Of a DNA stretch of 64,000 nt, positions 8,879 through 54,189 are shown piece by piece (position 1 is the stretch's first letter; each line of letters opens with the position of its first letter). The stretch lies in NCBI GenBank assembly GCA_000708835.1, contig DF236975.1, forward strand, positions 248,001 to 312,000, written 5' to 3'. This DNA comes from Klebsormidium nitens. Lineage: Eukaryota > Plantae > Klebsormidiophyceae. The notes under the pieces were generated by a model. It was given only the letters and a program-made list of their open reading frames with translations. It did not search any database and had not been told where the DNA came from. Both the position numbers and the translations under genes were made by a program.

Positions 8879-11800
8879 ATGAGTTCGGCACGCTGCGCCA
8901 GCTCTCTTGAGCGGGCCCAAAGATGGTCAACCTTGCAATGTCAAGAACAGACCTACACCCCACATCGGAAGAGCACGCTCAACCCAAGGAGGCGCGAAAT
9001 CAGAGCGACTCTGCATCGCTCAAGCAAGGTCGCATGGAGGCAATTGCCAGGAAGACCTACCACCGCAGGAAAAGTGCGTCATTCTGGTTTTCAGACTTTT
9101 CATTCTGTATACAAGGTCCTGAACTCATTGGCCGTAGGTTGTGATTAATGCGAGTTTGCCAAGCTCCATCCTGATGGCTAGCAACTTCGTTGCATTCTGA
9201 GTAGCAATGCCCATGTAGCGACGATGATAGCTTTGCGGCAAAAGGTTTCCTGTCTACATCTCTGAGCCAACCGGAGAATGGAACTCTATGTCGAAAAGTT
9301 TCTTCTGCGTGGCAGGACTTCTATATTCAACCATTTGGACAACCCGTTGATGCCCCTTTGAGGTTTACGGCAAAGCCTGTTAACGCCGTCTCCCAAGCCA
9401 GCCTACCAGGAGGTCAGTAGCCATTCAATTCCCTTCTACCACCACAAGATGGAAACGAAGATGATTGCAATGTAGAAGTGAATGCGAGGATGGAGCTGAA
9501 GTGCAGATTTGCACATTTGTCAACATGTAGTGAAATGGTTCTATGAAAGGCATAACCTGGAGAAGACACTGATGCCATTGTTTTTGCAGGGTCTGATTCT
9601 GAGTTGAGGGGTGCGCTTGACTTGGCCAGCGATGAGGAGTTGCATGAGATTGTCAATATCTTGTATGGGAGAAGGTAAGCTGGCGTATCAACCTGGTATC
9701 TTTGGTCCAGAAACCTTTCAGATTCAGACTCCTTATTTGTCCGGAGTGCAGTGTTTGCAAATTGCTTCAGAGGCTCCTTTCGCTTCGGATTCTGAGATCA
9801 GCTTTGGGAATCCAAGCAGTGGTGACGGAGAGGGCAATCACAACATCTCCTGGATGACTGGAAACCGTTTGACCACCAATCTCCAAAGAACAGTTTGATC
9901 ATTCAAGTCTGCATTAGTCCACAACCTGATTCAGCCTGTGCCAGCACCATATAGCAGATTAGCGATTACAATCATATTGCGTCAAGCAAATCAAGCCACC
10001 TACTAGTCTGTCCCTCTGACCAATGTCTATCCTTGCGTGCAGCCCCCTCAGTCCCATTCTGAAGTCCATTGCCACCGGGGATGGTTCCTCCTCTGACGGC
10101 GAGGATGGCGGAGCGGGTCACCCCCGGAGGGACTTCCGGGACATGCTGAGCGAGAGAGAGACACTTCTCCGCAGGCTGGAGGCGCGGTTCTTCTTCCTGG
10201 CTGCCGATGCCAAGGCGACCATGACGTGAGTTGGCTTGCTTGGAAAGTGAGCTGGCTTGAACAAGTGTGAGCAGAGTTGGTCATGCTGTATGTGGGAGGA
10301 CCCCAAAGGTGGAAATGTTGATGAAGATGGCGAATTGCGGGGGCCCGTGAAGGAATCACAAGATTTGGCGAATCTGACTTGGGCCTTTTGCAGCTTTAAG
10401 GCCCCTACTACTTATGCTCAACGCATGAATTTCATGTTTACGGATTGGTTTGCGCTGGATCTATCAAGGAAAAGGCTGACCGACAGGGTGACCTCAATAG
10501 AGCGGCCCCTGACACAAGCGGACCCCAAACCATTCGGTTCCCTGCGATTGGTCACTTTATCCCCCTTGTATCTGCCCTGTCCTCAGAAGCACGCTAATAC
10601 AGATCTTATTCTCTTCGGCTACTATCTGGACACTCTTACGTTCAAAGCCCTGTAATGACAGGACCCCATGTGATTGGATGGTAACATTCGTCCCAGAACT
10701 CCATCAGGTACTTCCTGCTCTGCATTCCGCCTTTTTAAAGCGAACGCCTCCAATCGACTGCCCAGAATATTTGAAGTCCTGTACAGAGTCGCCTGAAGAG
10801 ATATTCGAATATATCTGCGCAGGGGCAAACGACCGAGCTACCGCCAGGTGCTGCTGTGCGTGCGTCAGAAGCTACGCGTCCCATGCTCCAATGTGCTGTC
10901 GACTGCGGACCTTGAAGCGGAGATCTTCTTGCACTTACTGCAAGAGTATTCCAGGTACCCGAGGCAATCCTTTCTTCTCAGCTTCATGCAACGGCTTTGT
11001 GTTCCAAGCGCTCGGTCGGAAGCCCCATCCAAGTGCCACCTCGCCGCCACGTTGGATATGAACACTCAAGGGGCATGCGCTGCTTTCCAGCGATGCACCA
11101 ATTGCGACCACCTGGGCCTACTAAATCACAGAATGGGTACTGCTGGCCACAACGGCGATGACCTCGGCATGACGTCATCGACCACAGCCTGCTCTTTCAG
11201 TAGCCGCCAGACAGTGACGTGTCCTGGTTCCGTTTTCCGTCTTGCAGCGCACCGTCTAAACAGAAGGAACACGAGCAGGGCGTTGTGATGGTGAACGACC
11301 CGAGGCACGTGCAAGGCAAGCGGTGGCATCAGCTAGGGAAGCTGCTGGCGCCGGTCAAGATCGGGGGGGAGGAGGTGCTGTCAATACTAGCCAAGGTGAG
11401 CCCCTCGAAACGGCGTTGGTGAAATAGATAAGTTTGACCTCAGAGGAAGAGTCTGGGAAAATGAACTAACGAAGCTGCTTGATGTCAACGTTTCCAATAT
11501 CCGCCAGGGGTCAGATACCTTCTGCCGGATTCCATAATGTCAACACATGGCTTGAAGAGTAGTACGTGTCGAGAAATTGCATTGCCGTCGTTTTAAGTCG
11601 GCTGTGAAAAGTACGGAACTGAAATCAGCTGGAAGCATTCATTGGGTTGCCCACCTTGAGCGGAGGGTTTTCCGCGTAAGATCAGTGGGTCAGATTGTTC
11701 GATTGTTTAACCTGCAGTGGGGCCTTTGCACGAGGCCAAAGTAGCCGCCCTTGCTGTAGGAAACGATTAGCCGCAGCCGCATTTGCAAATTTCGGGTTAT

Positions 11801-46300: not shown

Positions 46301-47130
46301 CGGTAAAGACATGTAAGAAAAGAACTTGCCAAGGGTCTGCCACCTTCAGGAACCCTCCATTGATACCACCAGGCTTGTTACCAAGTATTCAAGATGCAGT
46401 CGTGATCGCCTGGATCGAAGCAAAGGCAGAAACAAGTCATCTGCATCACGCAAATTTCACTTCGCGATCTTGGAGCTCACTTGGATCATTGATCTCTGCA
46501 GATGAAGCTTCCAACTTTGGAGGCGAACTTGATGTGGTTACCACAGCAGGCGAGCCAGCCTCTGACCAGGGGCCAATGATGAATCGAGAGTGAGTCTTTT
46601 CGCTCTGCAACTCCCATATGAGTAGATCTTTACTGGTGGTGTGGAGAAGATTCCAGTTCTGAGACTGCAGCAGCTGATTGACCCGGGGCAGATCAGCTTG
46701 TGAAGAACGCCTTGCTGTTTGGAGAACTAATCCTGGTAATTCGTTTACAAAAGCTTGTCAGATTTGAGAGCACAGTTGCACTAACTCTGGCTTACCCGTC
46801 ATCTGGTGCACAGATTAGGATGGGATGAAACCCATATCCTTCCTTCAAATCCTCTATATGTAGCAGGTGCATAACACAGGAAGTTCTGGCAGCCAACCAG
46901 GATACATAATATTTCAGTCTTGGTTTATTGGACAGATAACCGGTATTTAACCTTCTGTTTACCGGCCAAGTCTGGTGATGGGACATATAACGTCGTTCTG
47001 ACCAGCCCATAACATTCGAGGTTATCGGCAGAGTTTCTAAGCAATGCTGACGGTGTTAACTTGCAGGTCCGTGTTCAGGACGTCGTGCGTGCAATAGCAG
47101 ATGGGAGTAGGTGGAACCTCCCCTGTCAAG

Positions 47131-50100
47131 ATGGCGCCACGTGTCAAAAGCAGAGCAGTCTGGACGAGGGTGGCTCTGTCGTTGGTGGTGCTTTCGTTGG
47201 GGGTAGCAGGTAAATCAAAGGCGCGAATTTGCTTCACAATCTGGGTCAAGCAGGTCCGCTTATTCTTGCTGTCATCATTCAGAGCACCGGAAGATGCCAC
47301 GGAACTTTTGATTCGTACGGGCTCTTACAAACACTATCTGTACAACTTGGAAAGGATTACACACTAGCATCTTTAAAGAAAGGGCATGCTTTAAGGGGAC
47401 GACACTGTCTACGGAATCTGATCTGAACAGTAAAATGTCGACGTTCAAGTGACCGGAAGCTGCACAATCGAAGCGGACCAATTCGGATCCTCCTCGGAAG
47501 GTCTTACGCCGAGTCGATGCGACAATGAGCAAATCATGCTAGCTGCCCTTCGACATAGATAAAAGATAAGAGCTCCAAGAAGAGGCTTTTCCTTGATGAC
47601 TTGCTATTCTTAGTATTGAAACTGAATTTAGAATATCTTGTCGATCCAGACGCACGTCTTATATTTCCACCCGACTTCCCAAGTCCCCAAGGAACAGTGC
47701 GCCTGCCGACCGCGCTCGCGAACCCAATAGCCGTGGACTTCACCAAGCTGCCTCAGTATCCAAGGGCGGGCGTTACCTTCTTCACATCAAGAGTGGCGGC
47801 GATTTTGCAAGGTGCGAGTACTTTTCAACTATGATCCTCGTGACCTCAACGGTCTGAGTGATGTTTCTACTGTACTTCCTGAGTATTTCGGGCCTTTTGA
47901 ACAAGTCTTCCTATTTCACCAGCATCAGAACGGCTTGTTTTTCTTTGTCGTCTCCCAGCCGAAATCAGCCGCCTGCGTTGTAAGCTGGTTTGCCCACCTC
48001 CCCCAAGTCGAGCAGATTTTTCCAACCCGTGATTCAGCCCCTTAATCTGGGCTCCCTTTCGCCCTACAGGCTCGGTCTCTGTCCAAGTTCCACCCCCGGG
48101 CATGAACGGTCAACCGCTCCAAAAGACCTCAGTCCAGTACACGATAACCGTTGGCTGGGACGTTCTCCAAGTCACCATCGTAGCCGCCGACCAGCCGCTC
48201 TACCTGAACCAGCAGAAGATCCCCCCAGGGCAAAAGTCGAGCCCGGTTTACCTCGTCGGCCAAGTCACGATCCTCTCGGTCCTCGCAACCACCGCCCAAG
48301 ACGTCGCTTTGCGGACGTACGTCATCTACGTTTACCGTCCGGGGGCTCCCCCCGGGCTGGAACTCCCCTCCGCTCCACCAGTAGGAACCGCGCCCGCTTC
48401 GGGGGGGTCTACCAGCCCCCCGGCGGTGATCATTCCTGGAGCCCCTTCCCCCCCAAAAACCCCCACAGGAACACGAAAACCGCGGCCCCCCCGGACGTCC
48501 GCCCCCGTGTTTCCGCCCGGGGGATCCCCCTCTCCACCCTCGCAAGGGGCACAAACGCCCCCCTCGGCGAATAGCCCCCCGGGGGCGACCTCCGGTCCAT
48601 CCAACCCGGTTCCAAACCCGGTCTCCACGCCTGGGGGATCCCCCTCCCCCGGAGCAAGTGCTCCGAACACTCCTTCTGGGGGTGTTCCGGGGGCAACGCA
48701 GAGTGGTCCGCCTGCTTCGGGGGGATCCCCGGGGGGCAGTGGGTCTAACGGCGGGAGCACACCAGCCCCAAGCAGCGGAGGGGGTTCGCCGCCAGGGGGC
48801 AGCACGGGTGGCCCCCCCGGTTCGGGGGGCAGCACTTCCGCCCCTGGTCCGAGCGTAAGCGGCCCCCCTGGATCTGCGTCGGGGGGCGGCACAAGCGGCC
48901 CCCCTGGAACTGGAGCGGGGGGCACGAACGCCCCCACAAGCACTGGTGGGGGGACCCCTGACTCTGGTAGTGGCACCGGGGGGAGTCCTGGGACAGGGGG
49001 ACAGGGCACGGGCAGCGGAAGCCCAACGCAAACCCCCGGAAGTGGAAGCGGAACCGGAAGCAGCAACGGGGGAACTAACTCTCCAGGGGGGAGCGGTTCG
49101 AGCCCAGGGGGGGGCACGACGCCCTCTCCCTCCAGCCCGAGCAGTGGGGGAAGCCAAGCCCCCCCGGGGCTCAAGGACCCCCCGGAAACGGGAATGGCAG
49201 TGGAGGTAATGGGGGTTCTGGAAGTGGGGGGACTCCAAGCACCGGGGCGCCTGGCAGCGGTGGGGGGGGCGACGGTGGGAGTGGGGGAAGTACTGCGGCC
49301 CCGGGAGGTAACGGGGGGGCAGGCGGGACTGGAAGCCCCCCGCCCGAAGAAGGATCACCGACGCCGGCGGGAAGTCCCAACAGCCCAGGACAAGGTGAGT
49401 TTCGAGCAGCGGGATGAGTAGGGGCTGACCAGGTTCTGCTCACTGTTCACGTCTCTTGCTTGATTCGTGAGCGGAGAATTGGAAGCTCAGTGTCCGTTTG
49501 CTTGCAGTTTAGAACTGAATAGCCATGTTTAGAAACGATTCCGGTTTGAAGCAGCTTTAACGTGATTCGGGAGCCCGTCTTCAATCTCGGTTGACGGCCT
49601 GGTGTGCTCATGGTTACGCATTGAACACAAGCAATCAAGAAACAATTGCCTGGGCTGGATCGCTTTTCGAACACAGCGGATCTCCCCAACTAAAACAATC
49701 AGTCGACTCCGCTCTCTTTGAGTCCCTTCGGCCCTTAGATTTGCTTGCCGGTTTTGGAGCCAATTTGAAAAGTTCGCGTGCTCGTTATTCTGGTAGCGAA
49801 GGGTGCTAGCGCTATTATGCCAAGCGCTGCTTAATAGGACGAATCCGAGAGGCAAACCTGCTTTGGGAGCTGGTCTGAACTCAAGGTGCTCTGCTTTCGG
49901 CTTCCTTCGTCTAACGAAAAACTAAGAATCCCAAGTATTTGAACCTTTGGGGTGTCACCCCAAAGCTTTCTCCATCTTGTTGCATTTGGCGACCGTGCGG
50001 AGCGGCCAAAATTGTGCAACGTATTTGGCTTTCGTACGAACCGCATGGGAATCCAGCAACGCACTTTTCAGAAACTTCCTGCCGTTACAGGTGATCGACA

Positions 50101-53100
50101 AGGGTTTCGAGAATCTACGCTTCGGAATGGGGAGTTGAATGTAGACCCCTCTCGTCGCCTAGTGCGAGTCGTCCGCAAAGTGCCAGCCAAGTTCTAGTCT
50201 TTTTTTTACAATTTAGCTACTAACATGATTTCGATCATCAGAATACTTGCAAGTTTGGTATCGCGCGCACTCAGGATACACGAAACTGCTTCTCAAGCGA
50301 GTGTAGAGCTGGCGGCCTCTCTCCCTTGAGGGTTCCAGCAAGTGGATGATATGTGTCTGTTGCGAATCCATGTTGTAGAAAGTATTACGAAGATGCAGTA
50401 TGAACTTTCGGGCAAGTTGGAATGTTCCACGACGTTTACGTGTATTCAAATGGTCCGCCTTGATCAACTGTCAGCGCCGGACGGTTCTATTCACGCATTG
50501 AACGCTTAAGGACACATACTGTAAGAGGTGTTTTACCGGTGACGTACACGTCCGCCAAGGCAAGGAGCTCAATCTTTATTATCAAGTATCCAACTCATGT
50601 TTTCTGTAGATGTGAGGTAGGTCTTGGCCAGCTTTCAAGCTGATCATCAACTTTCTGGCTGGAACATCAAAACCAAACATTCTTCTACCTACTACGAAAG
50701 GATTGAACAAGCATATGAGTACCTCTGATCCGTCGGTTTGCAGGCAACCCCGGCAGCACTCCTTCGCAGCCGCCGCATGGGGGGGCTTCGGGACCCACTC
50801 CCGAGCAAGGGGGGGTCAGCACCAACAGCCCCGGTGGGGGGGGCAGCACGCCAAGCCCCGGGGGAAGCAGTTCGCCCGGCGGAACAGGATCCCCGGGCAG
50901 CGGAAGCCCCCCCGCTGGGAATGGGGGGGGAAGTGGCACCCCCCCAGAAGGAAACGGGGAGGCGAGTGGAAGCCCTCCAGGAGGAAACGGAGGGGCGAAT
51001 GGCAGCCCCCCGGAAGAAAACGGGGGGACGAACGGCAGCCCGCCAGGAGGCAATGGGGGGGTCAATGGCAGCCCCCAAGGAGGCAATGGGGGCGTGAATG
51101 GAAGCCCCCCGGAAGGGAACCTGGGGGGATCTGGCAGCCCACCCGGCGGAAACGGAGGAGCGATTGGCAGCCCCCCGGGAGGGATCGGAGGCGCGATTGG
51201 CAGCCCCCCGGGCGGGCACTGGACCCCCCCGAGCGAAACAGGGGGGAGTGGCAGCCCACCATCGAGTGGAAACGGCGGCGGAAGCCCGCCAGACGGGTCC
51301 GGAGGAACAGGAAGCCCGGGAAGCGGAAGCGGAAGCAACAGCCCACCGGAAAGCCCCCCGACCGACGCACCCGGCGCAGGTGGGTCTCCGACGGAGTGGC
51401 CAGCGCCCCCTGCTGATGGGCCCGCCGGCGGTCCTTCCGTTGGCAGCCCTCCGGATTCCGCTGGCCAGCCGACCGCGTCTCCTGGGAGCGGAACCGGGGC
51501 ACCAGGCGAAGCCGCAGGCGCTGAAGGCCCGGCCGAAGCCCCGTCAGAAAGTCCGTCAGAAAGTCCGTCAGGTGCCCCGGGGGGGCCGATCTGCGTCGGC
51601 GCTTGCAACCCGGGCGGTGGGGCGGAGATCATCGTGACCGGTCAGGCGTTCGACAGTTACCTGCAGTCGTGCACCACGTTTGTGGACGTCAACGGAAACG
51701 GAATCCAAGATGCCGACGAGCCGAGCGGAATGACGGACCTCTTCGGGCAGTTCAACTTGTCGACCCCGGTGTACGCCCCCCTGGTTTTGCTAGCGGGGGG
51801 GGAGTGCACTGACGCCGCGACCGGGGTGCTTCTACCGGGCATTCTTTCCGCCCCTCCGGGAGCAACCGTGATAACCCCATTAACCACGTTGATAACCCAA
51901 CTAGGCACGCGACAGAACATCGAAGCGGTAGCGGCGGAGCGCATCTTGGCAGAGGGTCTCGGGCTCAACGTGAGCGCGGCGCTCACGCTGACGTCGACTG
52001 ACGTCATCGCGGCCGTGCTCGCGACCCAGGACGGCGCCGCGGCGCGCGTGGTGGTGCAGAACACGCGCGCGCAGAACGTCGCCGCGATGGCGGCCGCGCT
52101 GATGTCGGCCGGAGGCGACCGCGCGGCGGGCGCGGCCGCGACGTTCGGCTCGTTGGCGGACGCCATCTGGACGCTGCCGACTCCGGACAGCGGAACGGCT
52201 CAAGGGAGCGGCACGAGCGAAGGCGACGAAACGGATGCACAGCTTGCAACAGAAGCCAACAACGATACGACCGGGGGATCGAGCCCGGGAGCCGGCCAGG
52301 CCAGCCTGCAGCTTCGGCGGTTGCTGGGGATGCTCTCTGAGGGTTCCCCCGGGGGTTCGATTGGCAACTTGGACTCTCGGAGAAGCATGACCGGGGTTGA
52401 CGTCACTGTGGAGGACGGGTGTAAAGAGGGCGGTCTCGAAAGGCGGCCTCACTGCTCGCGTCGAGTCGAAGCGGGAACAAGCGGAATGAACGCAGAGCTT
52501 GAAGAGATGACTGCGTCGCGGCAAGGGTCGGGCCTGGAAGGAGATTCGAGCAACGGAAGACAGAATCTTAAAGGTCGGAAAGGAAGAAAGTTACGGCGCT
52601 TGTTGCAGGACGAAGCGGATGCGTCTGATAAGACAGCGGATTCGCCTGCCGATCTGACCGACCCAGTCTTTCTAGAGTCCGCTTTAGAAGGGGCGTACAA
52701 ACTGTTGTCAAATACTTCGGTCCGGGGTTTGCAACCGATGACGTCAACCAACGACAGCACTTTTGGCGCGCCGGCACTATCGGCCGACGACTTTGCGCTG
52801 GCGGCTTCGGCGATGGGGGTCGCAAACGCCGCCATGGACGCCCCCCTGGAAGCGTTTCTGCAGCTCAACCTGGCCGGTAATACCAACCGGTCCGCAGCGA
52901 TCGAGTTTCTGAACGAGATCTGGCGCCGCGCGAAGGTCGCGCAGTCGAACTTCGCGGACGTGCTCGTGCAACTAGGCGCGGGAGAGATCAACCGCACCGC
53001 GGCCGCGGCCGCGCTCTCGCCGGCCGCGTTCGAAAGCCTCGTGGCCAATACCACGCTCTTGGTATCTTCCGGGGGGGGCCAAGCGTCGCTTCAGGCGCAG

Positions 53101-54189
53101 ACTGGGGCGCCCCCCCCTCCGGGAGTGATCGAGTTGCCGGGGAGTGTGGTCGGGGGAAAGCACCGGGCGAAGTCGTGGGTGTGGATCGTGATCGGGGTGG
53201 CGGTCGGAGTGGGCGGATTGCTGCTCTGCTGCTGCTGCGGGGGGGTGGCGTACTACTGCTACAGAAGGAAGAAGAGTGAGCGATCAAACCCCCGGAACGG
53301 AAACTTTTGTCGGTTGTTACAGACTATTTCGTTCGCAAGCGAATTCGGTCGAAATAGAGCGAAACGCTCCCTTAGAGATATAACAGTTCCTCCTTAATTC
53401 TGATAGACCGTTCGGTCTTCATTCGACCCACAGAAGGTTTGAAATCTGTCAAGAAGATGGGACCCTATCCATGATCCTCAAAAGCCGATGTGTCTTGTAG
53501 GTCAAATCGTTCCTCCTTCCTCTAGATGCGGCAGTCAAATTGAACTCGCATGGATCACCCCAATCCGTTCGTGCATCAGGACATGTATTTACTAACTTTC
53601 TTCGTGTCAAGCCTCATAAACAGCGTGGAACTACGTTATTTTCTACTGTTGCTCAACACAAGAGGCCTGCGAAACTGGTGGACTTTGTCCTCGTGACTTG
53701 AACGCTCTCCTTCCACGTATTCAAAGCGTCGAACCTTACCGAAGAGCATCGAAGGATACTTGTCCTGACTCACTTTCTGCTTTCGCGCGCAAAGGGACGA
53801 ATCCCAGTCTGTTAGGACGAGTTTTTCGACCCACTCTTTCTCTCTCTTCTTCAGACCGCCGAACGGGCCACCGGGGTGCCGACCCCGAGCAAGGCCCGCC
53901 CATCAGCCCCCGTCGCTGGCCGTGGAGTCCCCGCCCGGTGGCTTCCTCCGACCACTCAACACCGCCCACAGAGGAATCCCCCGACGTGGCCTCCCCGGTA
54001 GAAAGTCCCCCGGTTTCGCCCGGGGCAATTCTCCGGAGCCATAGCATAGCCCTTCCCCCGAGCACGCACTTATTACCGGTGGCCGCCCAAGCGGAAACCG
54101 CGCGAGAGGCGCCGCCGGGGGTGGACGAAACGCCGCAGGAGACGGCGTTTTCGACCCCCCGGTCCGGGATCTCGTCCGATTCGGACTGA
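47131..54189 (+). CDS. Type-I membrane surface glycoprotein: signal peptide, cadherin-like beta-sandwich, Gly/Ser/Pro stalk, cyanobacterial-exoprotein-like domain, TM helix, Ser/Pro-rich cytosolic tail
   Basis: Exons 47131-47209, 47632-47811, 48070-49394, 50744-53275 and 53855-54189, all with phase-1 junctions; one missing base in the C7G4 run at ~49160-49169. SP: MAPRVKSRAVWTRVALSLVVLSLGVA. Beta-sandwich: VQYTITVGWDVLQVTIVA..LYLNQQKIPPGQKSSPVYL..TILSVLATTAQDVALRTYVIYVYR. Second domain: AFDSYLQSCTTFVDVNGNGIQDADEPSGMTDLFGQF..TDAATG..LSAPPGATVITPLTTLI. TM: WVWIVIGVAVGVGGLLLCCCCGGVAYYCY followed by RRKK. Confidence 0.82.

What the first reader, a model, noticed from the sequence alone, without database searches (positions are those of the whole stretch)
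47131..54189. Algal membrane protein built from bacterial-type surface-protein modules (cadherin-like sandwich plus cyanobacterial exoprotein-like domain)
Seen: an intron-containing gene with SP, a beta-sandwich ending RTYVIYVYR, an ~800-residue G/S/P stalk, then the domain at 51628-52170 (TGQAFDSYLQSCTTFVDVNGNGIQDADEPSGMTDLFGQFNL..GGECTDAATG..LSAPPGATVITPLTTLITQL..ILAEGLGL..TDVIAAV..QNV), a single TM with CCCC, and a cytosolic tail with many SP motifs. Knowledge: the first module fits the Cadherin-like beta sandwich family (PF12733), mostly prokaryotic. The DG/DSY..F.D.N.NG..D..EP..TD..G.F..TG..L.AP....TPLTTL pattern is, from my memory, typical of giant Ca-binding exoproteins of cyanobacteria and other Gram-negatives; DxNxNGxxDxxE is an EF-hand-like Ca loop. 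Inference: a horizontally or endosymbiotically acquired adhesin domain has been domesticated into a eukaryotic receptor/adhesin with a phosphorylatable tail. I know of no such architecture in land plants.
Basis: partly seen in the sequence, partly recalled or inferred. Interest (0 to 1): 0.8.

Follow-up and report, generated by a model that had tools for sequence, protein, structure and literature searches.

The report
Algal surface protein with bacterial module
The green alga Klebsormidium nitens has one long membrane-anchored surface glycoprotein, filed in the database as two separate genes, and one of its outer domains is a calcium-loop module otherwise found in surface proteins of proteobacteria, so it was most likely captured from bacteria.

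Summary
The window is Klebsormidium nitens scaffold DF236975.1. GenBank annotates 47101-49421 (KFL_000260490) and 50045-54189 (KFL_000260500) as two genes. The evidence favours one five-exon gene of about 1,477 codons.

- **Layout:** signal peptide, a borderline Cadherin-like (PF12733) sandwich, a G/S/P/T stalk of about 634 residues, a 180-residue bacterial-type module, a lineage-specific helical region, one TM helix with CCCC, and an S/T-P-rich tail.
- **One gene:** two related algal genomes keep the same exon order and the same phase-1 junction. One has no flanking synteny. One transcript-like contig is spliced at the 49394 donor.
- **Frame break:** exon 3 is broken near 49156-49170 in the reference but intact in both relatives.
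- **Bacterial module:** a profile built from bacteria alone hits algal residues 312-492 at E 3e-31. The nearest 80 genome loci are almost all Pseudomonadota, and none is cyanobacterial.
- **Module identity:** no Pfam or NCBIfam model covers it. The best solved fold is the non-heme domain of Geobacter PgcA (Z 8.4).
- **Range in eukaryotes:** only Klebsormidium-like algae were identified.

Transfer from bacteria is likely, but the donor is unresolved. The adhesion or wall-sensing function is inferred, not shown.

The parts
47131..47209 (+). Exon 1: start codon and signal-peptide-like leader (MAPRVKSRAVWTRVALSLVVLSLGVA). The donor is G|GTAAAT, phase 1.
   Evidence: Sequence. The MAPRV start and leader are conserved in relative L004, but the annotated upstream Met at 47101 is not. 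Signal-peptide status is judged from the pattern only. No predictor was run.
47650..47811 (+). Exon 2: N-terminal ectodomain segment (ARLIFPPDFPSPQGTVRLPTALANPIAVDFTKLPQYPRAGVTFFTSRVAAILQ). Phase 1 at both ends.
   Evidence: The acceptor and donor are listed. The same exon is used in the annotated protein P0163. It is conserved in L004 (56% identity) and partly in L002 (55% over 33 aa).
48070..48350 (+). Exon 3, first part: Cadherin-like beta-sandwich ending RTYVIYVYR.
   Evidence: PF12733 scores 25.6 bits for the exon alone (cutoff 24.2), 26.3 for L004, 22.3 for L002 and 23.9 for P0163:1-200. Identity is about 82% to L004 (over a 203-aa match that runs on into the stalk) and 74% to L002. dN/dS against L004 is about 0.09.
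48351..49394 (+). Exon 3, second part: G/S/P/T-rich stalk A, about 354 residues. The donor is CAAG|GTGAGT at 49394/49395.
   Evidence: The composition is 79-81% G/S/P/T. A transcript-like contig is spliced at this donor. In L004 (7246-8853) and L002 (7588-9390) the sandwich and the whole stalk form one ORF that ends at the equivalent donor.
49156..49170 (+). Frame break inside exon 3. The reading frame moves by -1 in a C7G4 run.
   Evidence: The three-frame translations are. Exon 3 is 1325 nt, which is 3n+2. K. nitens is 13 nt shorter than L004 here, equal to one 12-nt repeat unit plus 1 nt. No read or contig covered this spot.
49395..50743 (+). Intron 3. It holds an AG|GT at 50090/50091 that one contig uses as an acceptor. 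It also holds the start (50045) and first exon (50045-50090) of the annotated KFL_000260500 model.
   Evidence: The joint 49394|50091 is GT..AG, and the contig then runs on to 50227. The annotated Met and the AG|GT are not conserved in L004.
50744..51585 (+). Exon 4, first part: stalk B, 280 residues with about eleven GSPPxx units.
   Evidence: The composition is 75% G/S/P/T and the repeat units are listed. The acceptor TTTGCAG|GC is phase 1.
51586..51630 (+). Cys-containing linker PICVGACNPGGGAEI in front of the module.
   Evidence: The two Cys residues are invariant in the four algal sequences.
51631..52173 (+). Bacterial-type module (P0001 residues 312-492): a beta-sandwich with a Ca-type loop, followed by a helical bundle.
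   Evidence: A bacteria-only HMM scores 125.7 bits, E 3e-31 at Z = 1.8e9. The exhaustive search found 1384 hits. tblastn to 205 bacterial genome loci gave 35-50% identity for the 80 listed. The AF2 model has pLDDT 82.6. Atlas fold matches are bacterial at TM 0.62-0.71. PDB 9i0e scores Z 8.4.
51685..51720 (+). Putative Ca2+-binding loop D330-V-N-G-N-G-I-Q-D-A-D-E341.
   Evidence: In 66 bacterial sequences the matching columns are D 100%, N/D 98%, N/D 100%, G 76%, D 83% and E 98%. The loop lies between strands in the model. Ca binding itself was not tested.
52174..53175 (+). Lineage-specific, mostly helical membrane-proximal ectodomain, including the conserved NRSAAIEFLNEIWRR block.
   Evidence: Only algal sequences match profile positions beyond about 280. 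There are no Pfam, NCBIfam or PDB sequence hits. dN/dS against L004 is about 0.19. The AF2 model with four sequences failed at pLDDT 29.
53176..53262 (+). Transmembrane helix with CCCC (53227-53238) near its cytosolic end, followed by RRKK.
   Evidence: The sequence is and the coordinates were worked out. It is conserved in P0002 and P0003. Palmitoylation is inferred only.
53855..54189 (+). Exon 5: cytosolic tail with 6 SP and 3 TP motifs, plus the stop codon.
   Evidence: The acceptor CTTCAG|AC at 53855 reproduces the annotated KKNRRTGHRG. It is the best conserved part: 92% to L004 and 59% to L002.

Best explanation
Window positions 47131-54189 hold one five-exon nuclear gene of Klebsormidium nitens. 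It encodes a type I plasma-membrane surface glycoprotein of about 1,477 residues. The database splits it into KFL_000260490 and KFL_000260500. This happened because a one-base frame break in exon 3 leads to a false stop at 49421.

From outside to inside the protein has these parts:
- a cleaved leader;
- a small N-terminal region with a divergent Cadherin-like beta-sandwich;
- a Gly/Ser/Pro/Thr stalk of about 634 residues, probably heavily O-glycosylated and extended;
- a 180-residue module made of a beta-sandwich with a D-x-N-x-N-G-x-x-D-x-x-E calcium-type loop packed against a helical bundle;
- a helical region of about 330 residues found only in this algal lineage;
- one TM helix with a CCCC patch;
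- a conserved tail of about 115 residues rich in Ser/Thr-Pro.

The 180-residue module was acquired from bacteria, most likely Pseudomonadota. In bacteria it sits in RTX or cadherin-repeat exoproteins and in surface lipoproteins. After capture it was built into a eukaryotic exon and gained an algal-specific cysteine pair.

Inferred mechanism, not shown: the membrane-near module and helical region form a Ca2+-stabilised base. The stalk carries the Cadherin-like tip through the cell wall, where it binds wall or matrix carbohydrate or a substrate. Load or contact is then reported through the tail.
For: **One gene**
- A contig in run X1 is spliced at 49394 (GT..AG) rather than reading on to the annotated stop.
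- The 49394 donor and the 50744 acceptor are both phase 1 and join stalk to stalk.
- In L004 and L002 the sandwich and stalk are one ORF ending at the same ..PG(Q/H)|G donor. A phase-1 acceptor then leads into the big exon.
- L002 shares no flanking synteny but keeps the order sandwich exon, big exon, tail exon.
- The downstream model has no signal peptide, and its Met is not conserved.
- Both halves are under purifying selection, with dN/dS 0.09-0.19.

**Bacterial origin of the module**
- The exhaustive profile search gave 1384 hits. Those with names are proteobacterial Ca-binding or RTX proteins, plus one Verrucomicrobiaceae protein named SdrD B-like.
- The partner domains are Cadherin_4/5, Big_9 and HemolysinCabind.
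- The reciprocal bacteria-only HMM scores E 3e-31.
- The genome scan found 205 bacterial loci. The top 80 are nearly all Pseudomonadota at 35-50% identity.
- The loop and core motifs are conserved.
- Fold matches with known taxa are all bacterial. In one search the nine below an algal-labelled cluster are bacterial or unlabelled.
- Only two algal 50%-identity clusters appear in 1.84 billion representatives.

**Not contamination**
- The module lies inside a 2.5-kb spliced exon on a 355-kb scaffold.
Against: - The reference sequence does not give a continuous reading frame through exon 3. No read covered that spot.
- No transcript contig shows the 49394-to-50744 join itself. The one spliced contig joins 49394 to 50091 and runs on into intron sequence, which would give an early stop. 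The run is only guessed to be RNA.
- The tree places the algal clade on a long branch (1.31) in an unresolved polytomy. It shows neither nesting nor a donor.
- Only the top 150 of 1384 hits could be inspected. ESM Atlas clusters labelled 'Chlorophyta' share the fold at TM 0.90 and could not be retrieved, so the eukaryotic range is not fully known.
- Ca binding, glycosylation, palmitoylation, phosphorylation, localisation and function are all untested.
- PF12733 membership is borderline.
Confidence: 0.6

Rival explanations
1. The gene is intact in the lineage but broken in the sequenced strain. The frame break at about 49156-49170 is real. K. nitens NIES-2285 then makes only a truncated secreted protein of sandwich plus stalk ending at 49421, or nothing useful.
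For: As written, exon 3 is 3n+2 and the reference changes frame. K. nitens is 13 nt shorter than L004 at a short direct repeat, which could be a slippage deletion.
Against: The 2.5-kb downstream exon and the tail exon are fully open and under purifying selection against L004. The spliced contig uses the 49394 donor, which only makes sense in the shifted frame. The break lies in a C7G4 run, a typical site for base-calling errors.
Confidence: 0.2
2. The database annotation is right. There are two neighbouring genes: a secreted stalked Cadherin-like protein and a separate membrane protein starting at 50045.
For: This is the GenBank annotation. The only spliced contig does not show the 49394-to-50744 join and continues into 50091-50227.
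Against: - The annotated stop at 49421 lies beyond a donor that the contig uses.
- The downstream model lacks a signal peptide although most of it must be extracellular. Its start Met lies in poorly conserved intron sequence and is absent from L004.
- Phase-compatible junctions and the same exon order persist in L002, which has no flanking synteny.
Confidence: 0.1
3. The module was not transferred from proteobacteria. It is either an old eukaryotic or plastid (cyanobacterial) inheritance lost almost everywhere, or it moved from algae to bacteria.
For: The tree is unresolved and unrooted, and the algal branch is long. Atlas clusters labelled Chlorophyta carry the fold. The genome scan used one motif pattern, so it could have missed cyanobacterial versions.
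Against: - More than 1,300 hits came from the exhaustive search, and those inspected have typical bacterial partner domains and lipoprotein signals. The genome scan added 205 loci, the 80 listed spanning three bacterial phyla.
- Only two algal 50%-identity clusters were found.
- No cyanobacterium is among the 80 closest loci.
- All named hits are proteobacterial apart from one Verrucomicrobiaceae protein.
Confidence: 0.1
4. The bacterial-looking stretch is contamination or an assembly chimera.
For: None beyond the bacterial affinities of the module.
Against: The stretch is embedded in one exon between a eukaryotic G/S/P stalk and a TM and tail, with introns on both sides, on a 355-kb scaffold. 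The same layout occurs in independent assemblies from two other samples.
Confidence: 0.01

Closest known systems
Unnamed 'DGY ... F-D-x-N-x-N-G-x-x-D-x-x-E ... TD-x-x-G-x-F ... GG-x-D-x-x-TG ... AP-x-G-x-T-V-I-TPLTTL' module of bacterial RTX, cadherin-repeat and lipoprotein surface proteins. Examples: Algihabitans albus WP_162906485.1 'calcium-binding protein' and Halomonas CAO1661895.1 'hemolysin-type calcium-binding protein'.
   Same: The homology is significant in both directions. Identity is 39-45% over about 125 residues. The loop and core residues are the same. The predicted two-part fold, a beta-sandwich plus a helical bundle, is the same.
   Different: - The algal copy sits in a eukaryotic type I membrane protein with introns, a glycoprotein-like stalk and a cytosolic tail.
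- It has no RTX repeats and no bacterial cadherin or Big_9 repeats.
- It reads DSY where bacteria read DGY.
- It has an extra Cys pair (C325 and C370), made possible by a 3-residue insert.
- No Pfam or NCBIfam model covers the bacterial module.
Non-heme domain of the Geobacter sulfurreducens surface lipocytochrome PgcA (PDB 9i0e / 9i0d)
   Same: It is the best solved-structure match. Z is 8.4 over 143 aligned residues spanning both the sandwich and the helices, well above the next hit at Z 4.8. Foldseek ranks it second with probability 0.93. PgcA is also a surface-tethered protein with Pro-rich linkers (PMC5732950, PMC11520253). Atlas neighbours include cytochrome c fusions.
   Different: Identity is only 14% and rmsd is 6.4 A. 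A profile search finds no sequence-level match. The function of the PgcA non-heme domain is not described in the papers I could read. The algal protein has no heme domains.
Pfam PF12733, Cadherin-like beta sandwich domain
   Same: The N-terminal exon matches profile positions 14-89 of 89, at about the gathering score.
   Different: The scores straddle the cutoff, at 22.3-26.3 against 24.2. No relatives were found by word search apart from the gene's own annotation. The fold was not modelled here.
SdrD B-like / CnaB / carboxypeptidase-regulatory (transthyretin-like) Ca-binding sandwiches
   Same: Profile positions 19-67 (mostly 26-60), covering the Ca loop and the TD..G.F hairpin, recur 6-17 times in some hit proteins. 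One of these, from a Verrucomicrobiaceae bacterium, is named 'SdrD B-like domain-containing protein'. Weak fold matches to CnaB, carboxypeptidase D domain II and SusC NTE domains give Z 2.9-4.8.
   Different: The algal module has no Pfam hit to SdrD_B or CarboxypepD_reg at E <= 1. Those families also lack the attached helical bundle.
Stalked single-pass wall sensors and hydroxyproline-rich algal surface glycoproteins (yeast Wsc1/Mid2, plant PERKs, Volvox Algal-CAM). Recalled from my own knowledge, not tested here.
   Same: The general layout is shared: a signal peptide, a long Ser/Thr/Pro-rich glycosylated rod, one TM helix and a short signalling tail.
   Different: There is no sequence relationship and no kinase domain. 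Here the rod lies between two globular parts, one of which is of bacterial type.

Membership tests
Bacterial DGY/TPLTTL Ca-loop module (no database name) | Significant profile match in both directions over the whole module | tested here: met
   The algal profile hits bacterial proteins over profile positions of about 10-250 at E 1e-11 to 1e-26. A bacteria-only HMM built from 77 loci hits P0001 residues 312-492 at 125.7 bits, E 3e-31.
Bacterial DGY/TPLTTL Ca-loop module (no database name) | Conserved D-x-N/D-x-N/D-G-x-x-D-x-x-E loop and the core residues T346, G350, D372, T375-G376, A385-P386, and P394-L-T-T | tested here: met
   All are present in K. nitens. The bacterial column frequencies are 83-100%.
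Bacterial DGY/TPLTTL Ca-loop module (no database name) | Two-part fold: a beta-sandwich followed by a helical bundle | tested here: met
   The AF2 model has pLDDT 82.6, with strands at 15-89 and helices at 98-195. TM to bacterial Atlas models is 0.62-0.71, or 0.77-0.83 using the Atlas's own model.
Bacterial DGY/TPLTTL Ca-loop module (no database name) | Binds Ca2+ | not testable with these tools
   Inferred from the loop pattern only.
Pfam PF12733 Cadherin-like beta sandwich | Score at or above the gathering cutoff of 24.2 bits | tested here: inconclusive
   The scores are 21.0 (ORF from 48102), 25.6 (48033-48380), 23.9 (P0163:1-200), 26.3 (L004) and 22.3 (L002).
Pfam PF12733 Cadherin-like beta sandwich | Seven-strand sandwich fold | not tested
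RTX exoproteins (PF00353 HemolysinCabind) | Nonapeptide GGxGxDxUx repeats | tested here: not met
   No PF00353 hit on any exon translation. The repeats are present in the bacterial hit proteins.
EF-hand | Helix-loop-helix around the 12-residue loop, and a Pfam EF-hand match | tested here: not met
   There is no EF-hand family hit. In the model the loop (residues 34-46 of the modelled piece) lies between beta strands.
SdrD_B / CarboxypepD_reg | A Pfam match | tested here: not met
   No hit at E <= 1. There is only motif-level and weak fold resemblance.
Bacteria-to-eukaryote horizontal transfer | Recipient clade nested inside donor diversity with support | tested here: inconclusive
   The algal clade is supported (100*) but sits on a branch of length 1.31 arising from an open polytomy of proteobacterial sequences. 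The tree was a quick search and is unrooted.
Bacteria-to-eukaryote horizontal transfer | Absent from other eukaryotes | tested here: inconclusive
   The exhaustive search shows only two algal clusters and one fragment ahead of the bacterial hits. Word searches found only Klebsormidium-like proteins. Only 150 of 1384 hits were visible, and the Atlas 'Chlorophyta' clusters could not be inspected.
Bacteria-to-eukaryote horizontal transfer | Integrated in the host genome, not contamination | tested here: met
   The module lies inside a spliced exon on a 355-kb scaffold, and the same layout occurs in assemblies from two other samples.

The most novel reading that the evidence does not exclude
The module belongs to a large and still unnamed bacterial family of Ca-stabilised 'base' domains. 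These sit next to the membrane anchor of surface lipoproteins such as PgcA and of RTX adhesins. On this reading, Klebsormidium-type algae captured one and re-used it in the same position, at the foot of a glycoprotein stalk. That would give a terrestrial, biofilm-forming streptophyte a bacterial-style surface-attachment device.
Probability: 0.15. Interest if true: 0.75.

Novelty: new variant of a known kind. Interest (0 to 1): 0.55.

Why it matters
- **Annotation:** it corrects the annotation of a model streptophyte alga. Two 'hypothetical proteins' become one stalked membrane glycoprotein.
- **Domain-level capture:** it gives a clean example of capture at the level of a single domain. A bacterial surface module was built into a multi-exon eukaryotic gene, gained a disulfide-type cysteine pair, and has been kept under selection.
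- **An unmodelled bacterial family:** the bacterial module has well over a thousand members but no Pfam or NCBIfam model. Its only solved relative, the PgcA non-heme domain, has no described function.
- **Ecology:** Klebsormidium forms soil crusts and biofilms next to bacteria. A bacterial-type, calcium-dependent surface module could therefore bear on adhesion and wall sensing in early land-adapted algae.

Tried and rejected
- **Family scans:** Pfam and NCBIfam scans of the C-terminal ectodomain, the tail and the bacterial module found nothing beyond chance-level rows.
- **PDB by sequence:** sequence and profile searches against PDB found nothing.
- **First AF2 model:** the whole 524-residue ectodomain with four sequences failed at pLDDT 29. 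The C-terminal half therefore remains unmodelled.
- **Foldseek against PDB:** no match at E <= 0.001.
- **Word-index searches:** these returned only the gene itself, three algal relatives and three weak bacterial hits. The two weak hits I read (P0161, P0162) are bacterial lipoproteins, not algal proteins.
- **Metagenome contig scan:** the scan with the algal alignment found no relative.
- **Recursive splice site:** I considered that the AG|GT at 50090/50091 is a conserved recursive splice site. The motif is not conserved in L004, so I treat it as a cryptic or alternative acceptor.
- **Identity of L002's organism:** Pfam on five neighbouring ORFs gave nothing.
- **Literature:** no paper mentions the two locus tags or this gene among Klebsormidium transfers.
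- **RNA runs:** only one of four runs held any part of the stretch, as three short contigs.
- **Joined protein:** the joined five-exon protein was never assembled, searched or folded.

Full report
**Source and annotation.** The window is Klebsormidium nitens scaffold DF236975.1. Locus L001 position 8001 equals window position 50045. GenBank annotates two genes here.
- KFL_000260490 (P0163, 540 aa) spans window 47101-49421.
- KFL_000260500 (P0001, 970 aa) spans 50045-54189.

**Observation check.** The ATG at 47131 opens a leader, MAPRVKSRAVWTRVALSLVVLSLGVA. It is conserved in a close relative, whereas the annotated upstream Met at 47101 is not. The splice sites define five exons: 47131-47209, 47650-47811, 48070-49394, 50744-53275 and 53855-54189. 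All are GT..AG and phase 1. The first three agree with P0163 and the last two with P0001.
- Exon 3 begins with a sandwich ending RTYVIYVYR.
- The stalk is 277 + 76 residues in exon 3, one split junction codon, and 280 in exon 4. That is about 634 residues, 75-81% G/S/P/T, with about eleven GSPPxx units.
- The TM segment with CCCC, the RRKK stop-transfer and a tail with 6 SP and 3 TP motifs are all present.

**One gene or two.** Four lines favour one gene.
1. In run X1 a contig joins 49394 to 50091 across a GT..AG gap. The transcript is therefore spliced at the CAAG|GTGAGT donor and does not read on to the annotated stop at 49421.
2. The 49394 donor and the 50744 acceptor are both phase 1. Joining them continues the stalk as ...SPGQ-G-NPGSTPSQ....
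3. In L004 (a Logan contig, 79% identical in this protein and syntenic on both sides) and in L002 (a JGI metagenome contig, 51% identical, with no flanking synteny), the sandwich and the entire stalk form a single ORF. That ORF ends at the equivalent ..PGH|G or ..PGQ|G donor. In L002 the acceptor at 9836|9837 restores the frame into the big exon, and the tail exon follows downstream.
4. The downstream model lacks a signal peptide, and its Met lies in weakly conserved intron sequence that has no Met in L004.

Both halves are under purifying selection against L004. dN/dS is about 0.09 for the sandwich, 0.15 for the module and 0.19 for the C-terminal ectodomain.

There are limits to this evidence. 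The run is only guessed to be RNA. The contig continues into 50091-50227 rather than showing the 49394-to-50744 join. A further contig lies inside the intron at 49620-49886.

**Frame break.** Exon 3 is 1325 nt, which is 3n+2. The stalk switches from frame 0 to frame 2 in a C7G4 run at about 49156-49170. K. nitens is 13 nt shorter than L004 at this point. That equals one 12-nt repeat unit plus one base. This break explains the annotated stop at 49421. It may be a homopolymer error in the assembly or a real lesion in the strain. No read covered it.

**The bacterial-type module.** Pfam, NCBIfam and PDB sequence searches of the ectodomain found nothing. Word searches found only three algal relatives.

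An exhaustive profile search of 1.84 billion representatives gave 1384 hits at E <= 1e-3, of which 208 were at E <= 1e-10. After the two algal clusters, the hits match profile positions of about 10-250 in proteins of 150-4800 residues.
- Named members are a Verrucomicrobiaceae 'SdrD B-like' protein, gamma- and alphaproteobacterial MAG proteins, an Algihabitans albus 'calcium-binding protein' and a Halomonas 'hemolysin-type calcium-binding protein'.
- Their partner domains are Cadherin_4/5, Big_9, HemolysinCabind and beta-helix.
- Several are lipoproteins.
- A scan of one genome per bacterial species found 205 loci. The best 80 are alpha-, beta- and gammaproteobacteria, two Sulfurimonas and one Verrucomicrobiota, at 35-50% identity. 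None is a cyanobacterium.
- An HMM built from 77 of these bacterial loci alone hits P0001 residues 312-492 at 125.7 bits, E 3e-31 for a library of 1.8e9.
- No Pfam or NCBIfam model covers the bacterial module.

**Structure and residues.** With 70 sequences, AF2 gives pLDDT 82.6 and pTM 0.80. The model is a beta-sandwich (model residues 15-89) followed by a helical bundle (98-195).
- ESM Atlas neighbours at TM 0.62-0.71 are bacterial wherever taxa are known. They are fused to cadherin or Big_9 repeats, cytochrome c, MbnP or phosphoesterase.
- In PDB the only clear match is the non-heme domain of Geobacter PgcA (9i0e). Z is 8.4 over 143 aligned residues at rmsd 6.4 A and 14% identity. The next hit scores Z 4.8.
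- PgcA is a surface lipoprotein with Pro-rich tethers (PMC5732950, PMC11520253).
- The loop D330-x-N-x-N-G-x-x-D-x-x-E341 matches bacterial columns that are 76-100% conserved. So do T346, G350, D372, T375-G376, A385-P386 and P394-L-T-T.
- The loop lies between strands, so it is EF-hand-like only in ligand spacing.
- Algal-specific changes are DGY to DSY, and a Cys pair (C325 and C370) supplied partly by a 3-residue insert. Both are invariant in the four algal sequences.

**Origin.** The four algal sequences form one clade (100*) on a branch of length 1.31. It arises from an open polytomy of proteobacterial sequences. The tree therefore names no donor and does not by itself prove nesting. Transfer from bacteria is nevertheless the simplest reading, given three points.
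- The bacterial range is very wide, while the algal range is only two 50%-identity clusters.
- The partner domains are typically bacterial.
- The module lies inside a spliced exon in three independent assemblies.

A plastid origin finds no support. One caveat remains: Atlas clusters labelled 'Chlorophyta' share the fold at TM 0.90. I could not retrieve them. They may be fragments of the same algal family.

**Other parts.**
- PF12733 scores 21.0-26.3 bits against a cutoff of 24.2, depending on flanks and species. I treat membership as borderline. No relatives were found.
- The membrane-proximal region of about 330 residues is found only in these algae and could not be modelled.
- The tail is the best conserved part, at 92% to L004 and 59% to L002.

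**Mechanism (inferred).** This is a type I surface glycoprotein. A Ca2+-stabilised bacterial-type module and a helical region sit near the membrane. A long, probably O-glycosylated stalk carries a carbohydrate-binding-type sandwich outward through the wall. The CCCC patch is probably palmitoylated. The conserved Ser/Thr-Pro tail offers sites for proline-directed kinases. The most likely role is wall or substrate attachment with signalling. None of this was tested.

Noticed in passing
window 50088-50095 (AG|GT at 50090/50091): One transcript-like contig uses this AG as an acceptor for the 49394 donor and then continues to 50227. The same spot is the donor of the annotated KFL_000260500 model. 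Its layout is that of a recursive splice site, but the AG|GT is not conserved in L004. As read, the contig would meet a stop near 50195.
   Followed up: partly
window 49620-49886: A 268-nt contig of the same run lies wholly inside intron 3. It could be unspliced RNA, DNA carry-over or another transcript.
   Followed up: no
window 49156 versus L004 8476-8488: K. nitens lacks 13 nt relative to L004 at a short direct repeat (GGGGGAAGCC ... GGGGGAAGCC). Stalk length is therefore polymorphic through repeat-unit gain or loss.
   Followed up: partly
L002:7588-14902 (JGI metagenome 3300060284): A more distant alga carries the same gene layout (sandwich and stalk ORF, big exon, tail exon) but shares no flanking genes with K. 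nitens. Its organism is unknown, and five neighbouring ORFs have no Pfam family.
   Followed up: partly
proteins P0005, P0006, P0010, P0030 (bacterial hits): Profile positions of about 19-62, covering the Ca loop and the TD..G.F hairpin, recur 6-17 times in some large bacterial proteins. This suggests that the sandwich half of the module is related to SdrD B-like repeat units.
   Followed up: no
bacterial hits P0018, P0051, P0060, P0161, P0162: In several bacterial proteins the module follows directly after a lipoprotein signal and lipobox cysteine. In RTX-type hits it follows an N-terminal region of about 200 residues. Both positions place it near the cell-surface anchor.
   Followed up: no
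window 48129-49443 and 50685-51632, minus strand: Long minus-strand ORFs of 280-409 aa overlap the GC-rich stalk-coding DNA. They look like by-products of low-complexity, GC-rich sequence and not genes.
   Followed up: no
window 53855-54186: The cytosolic tail exon is more conserved (92% to L004) than any extracellular part (about 75-82%). This points to a constrained intracellular partner.
   Followed up: partly
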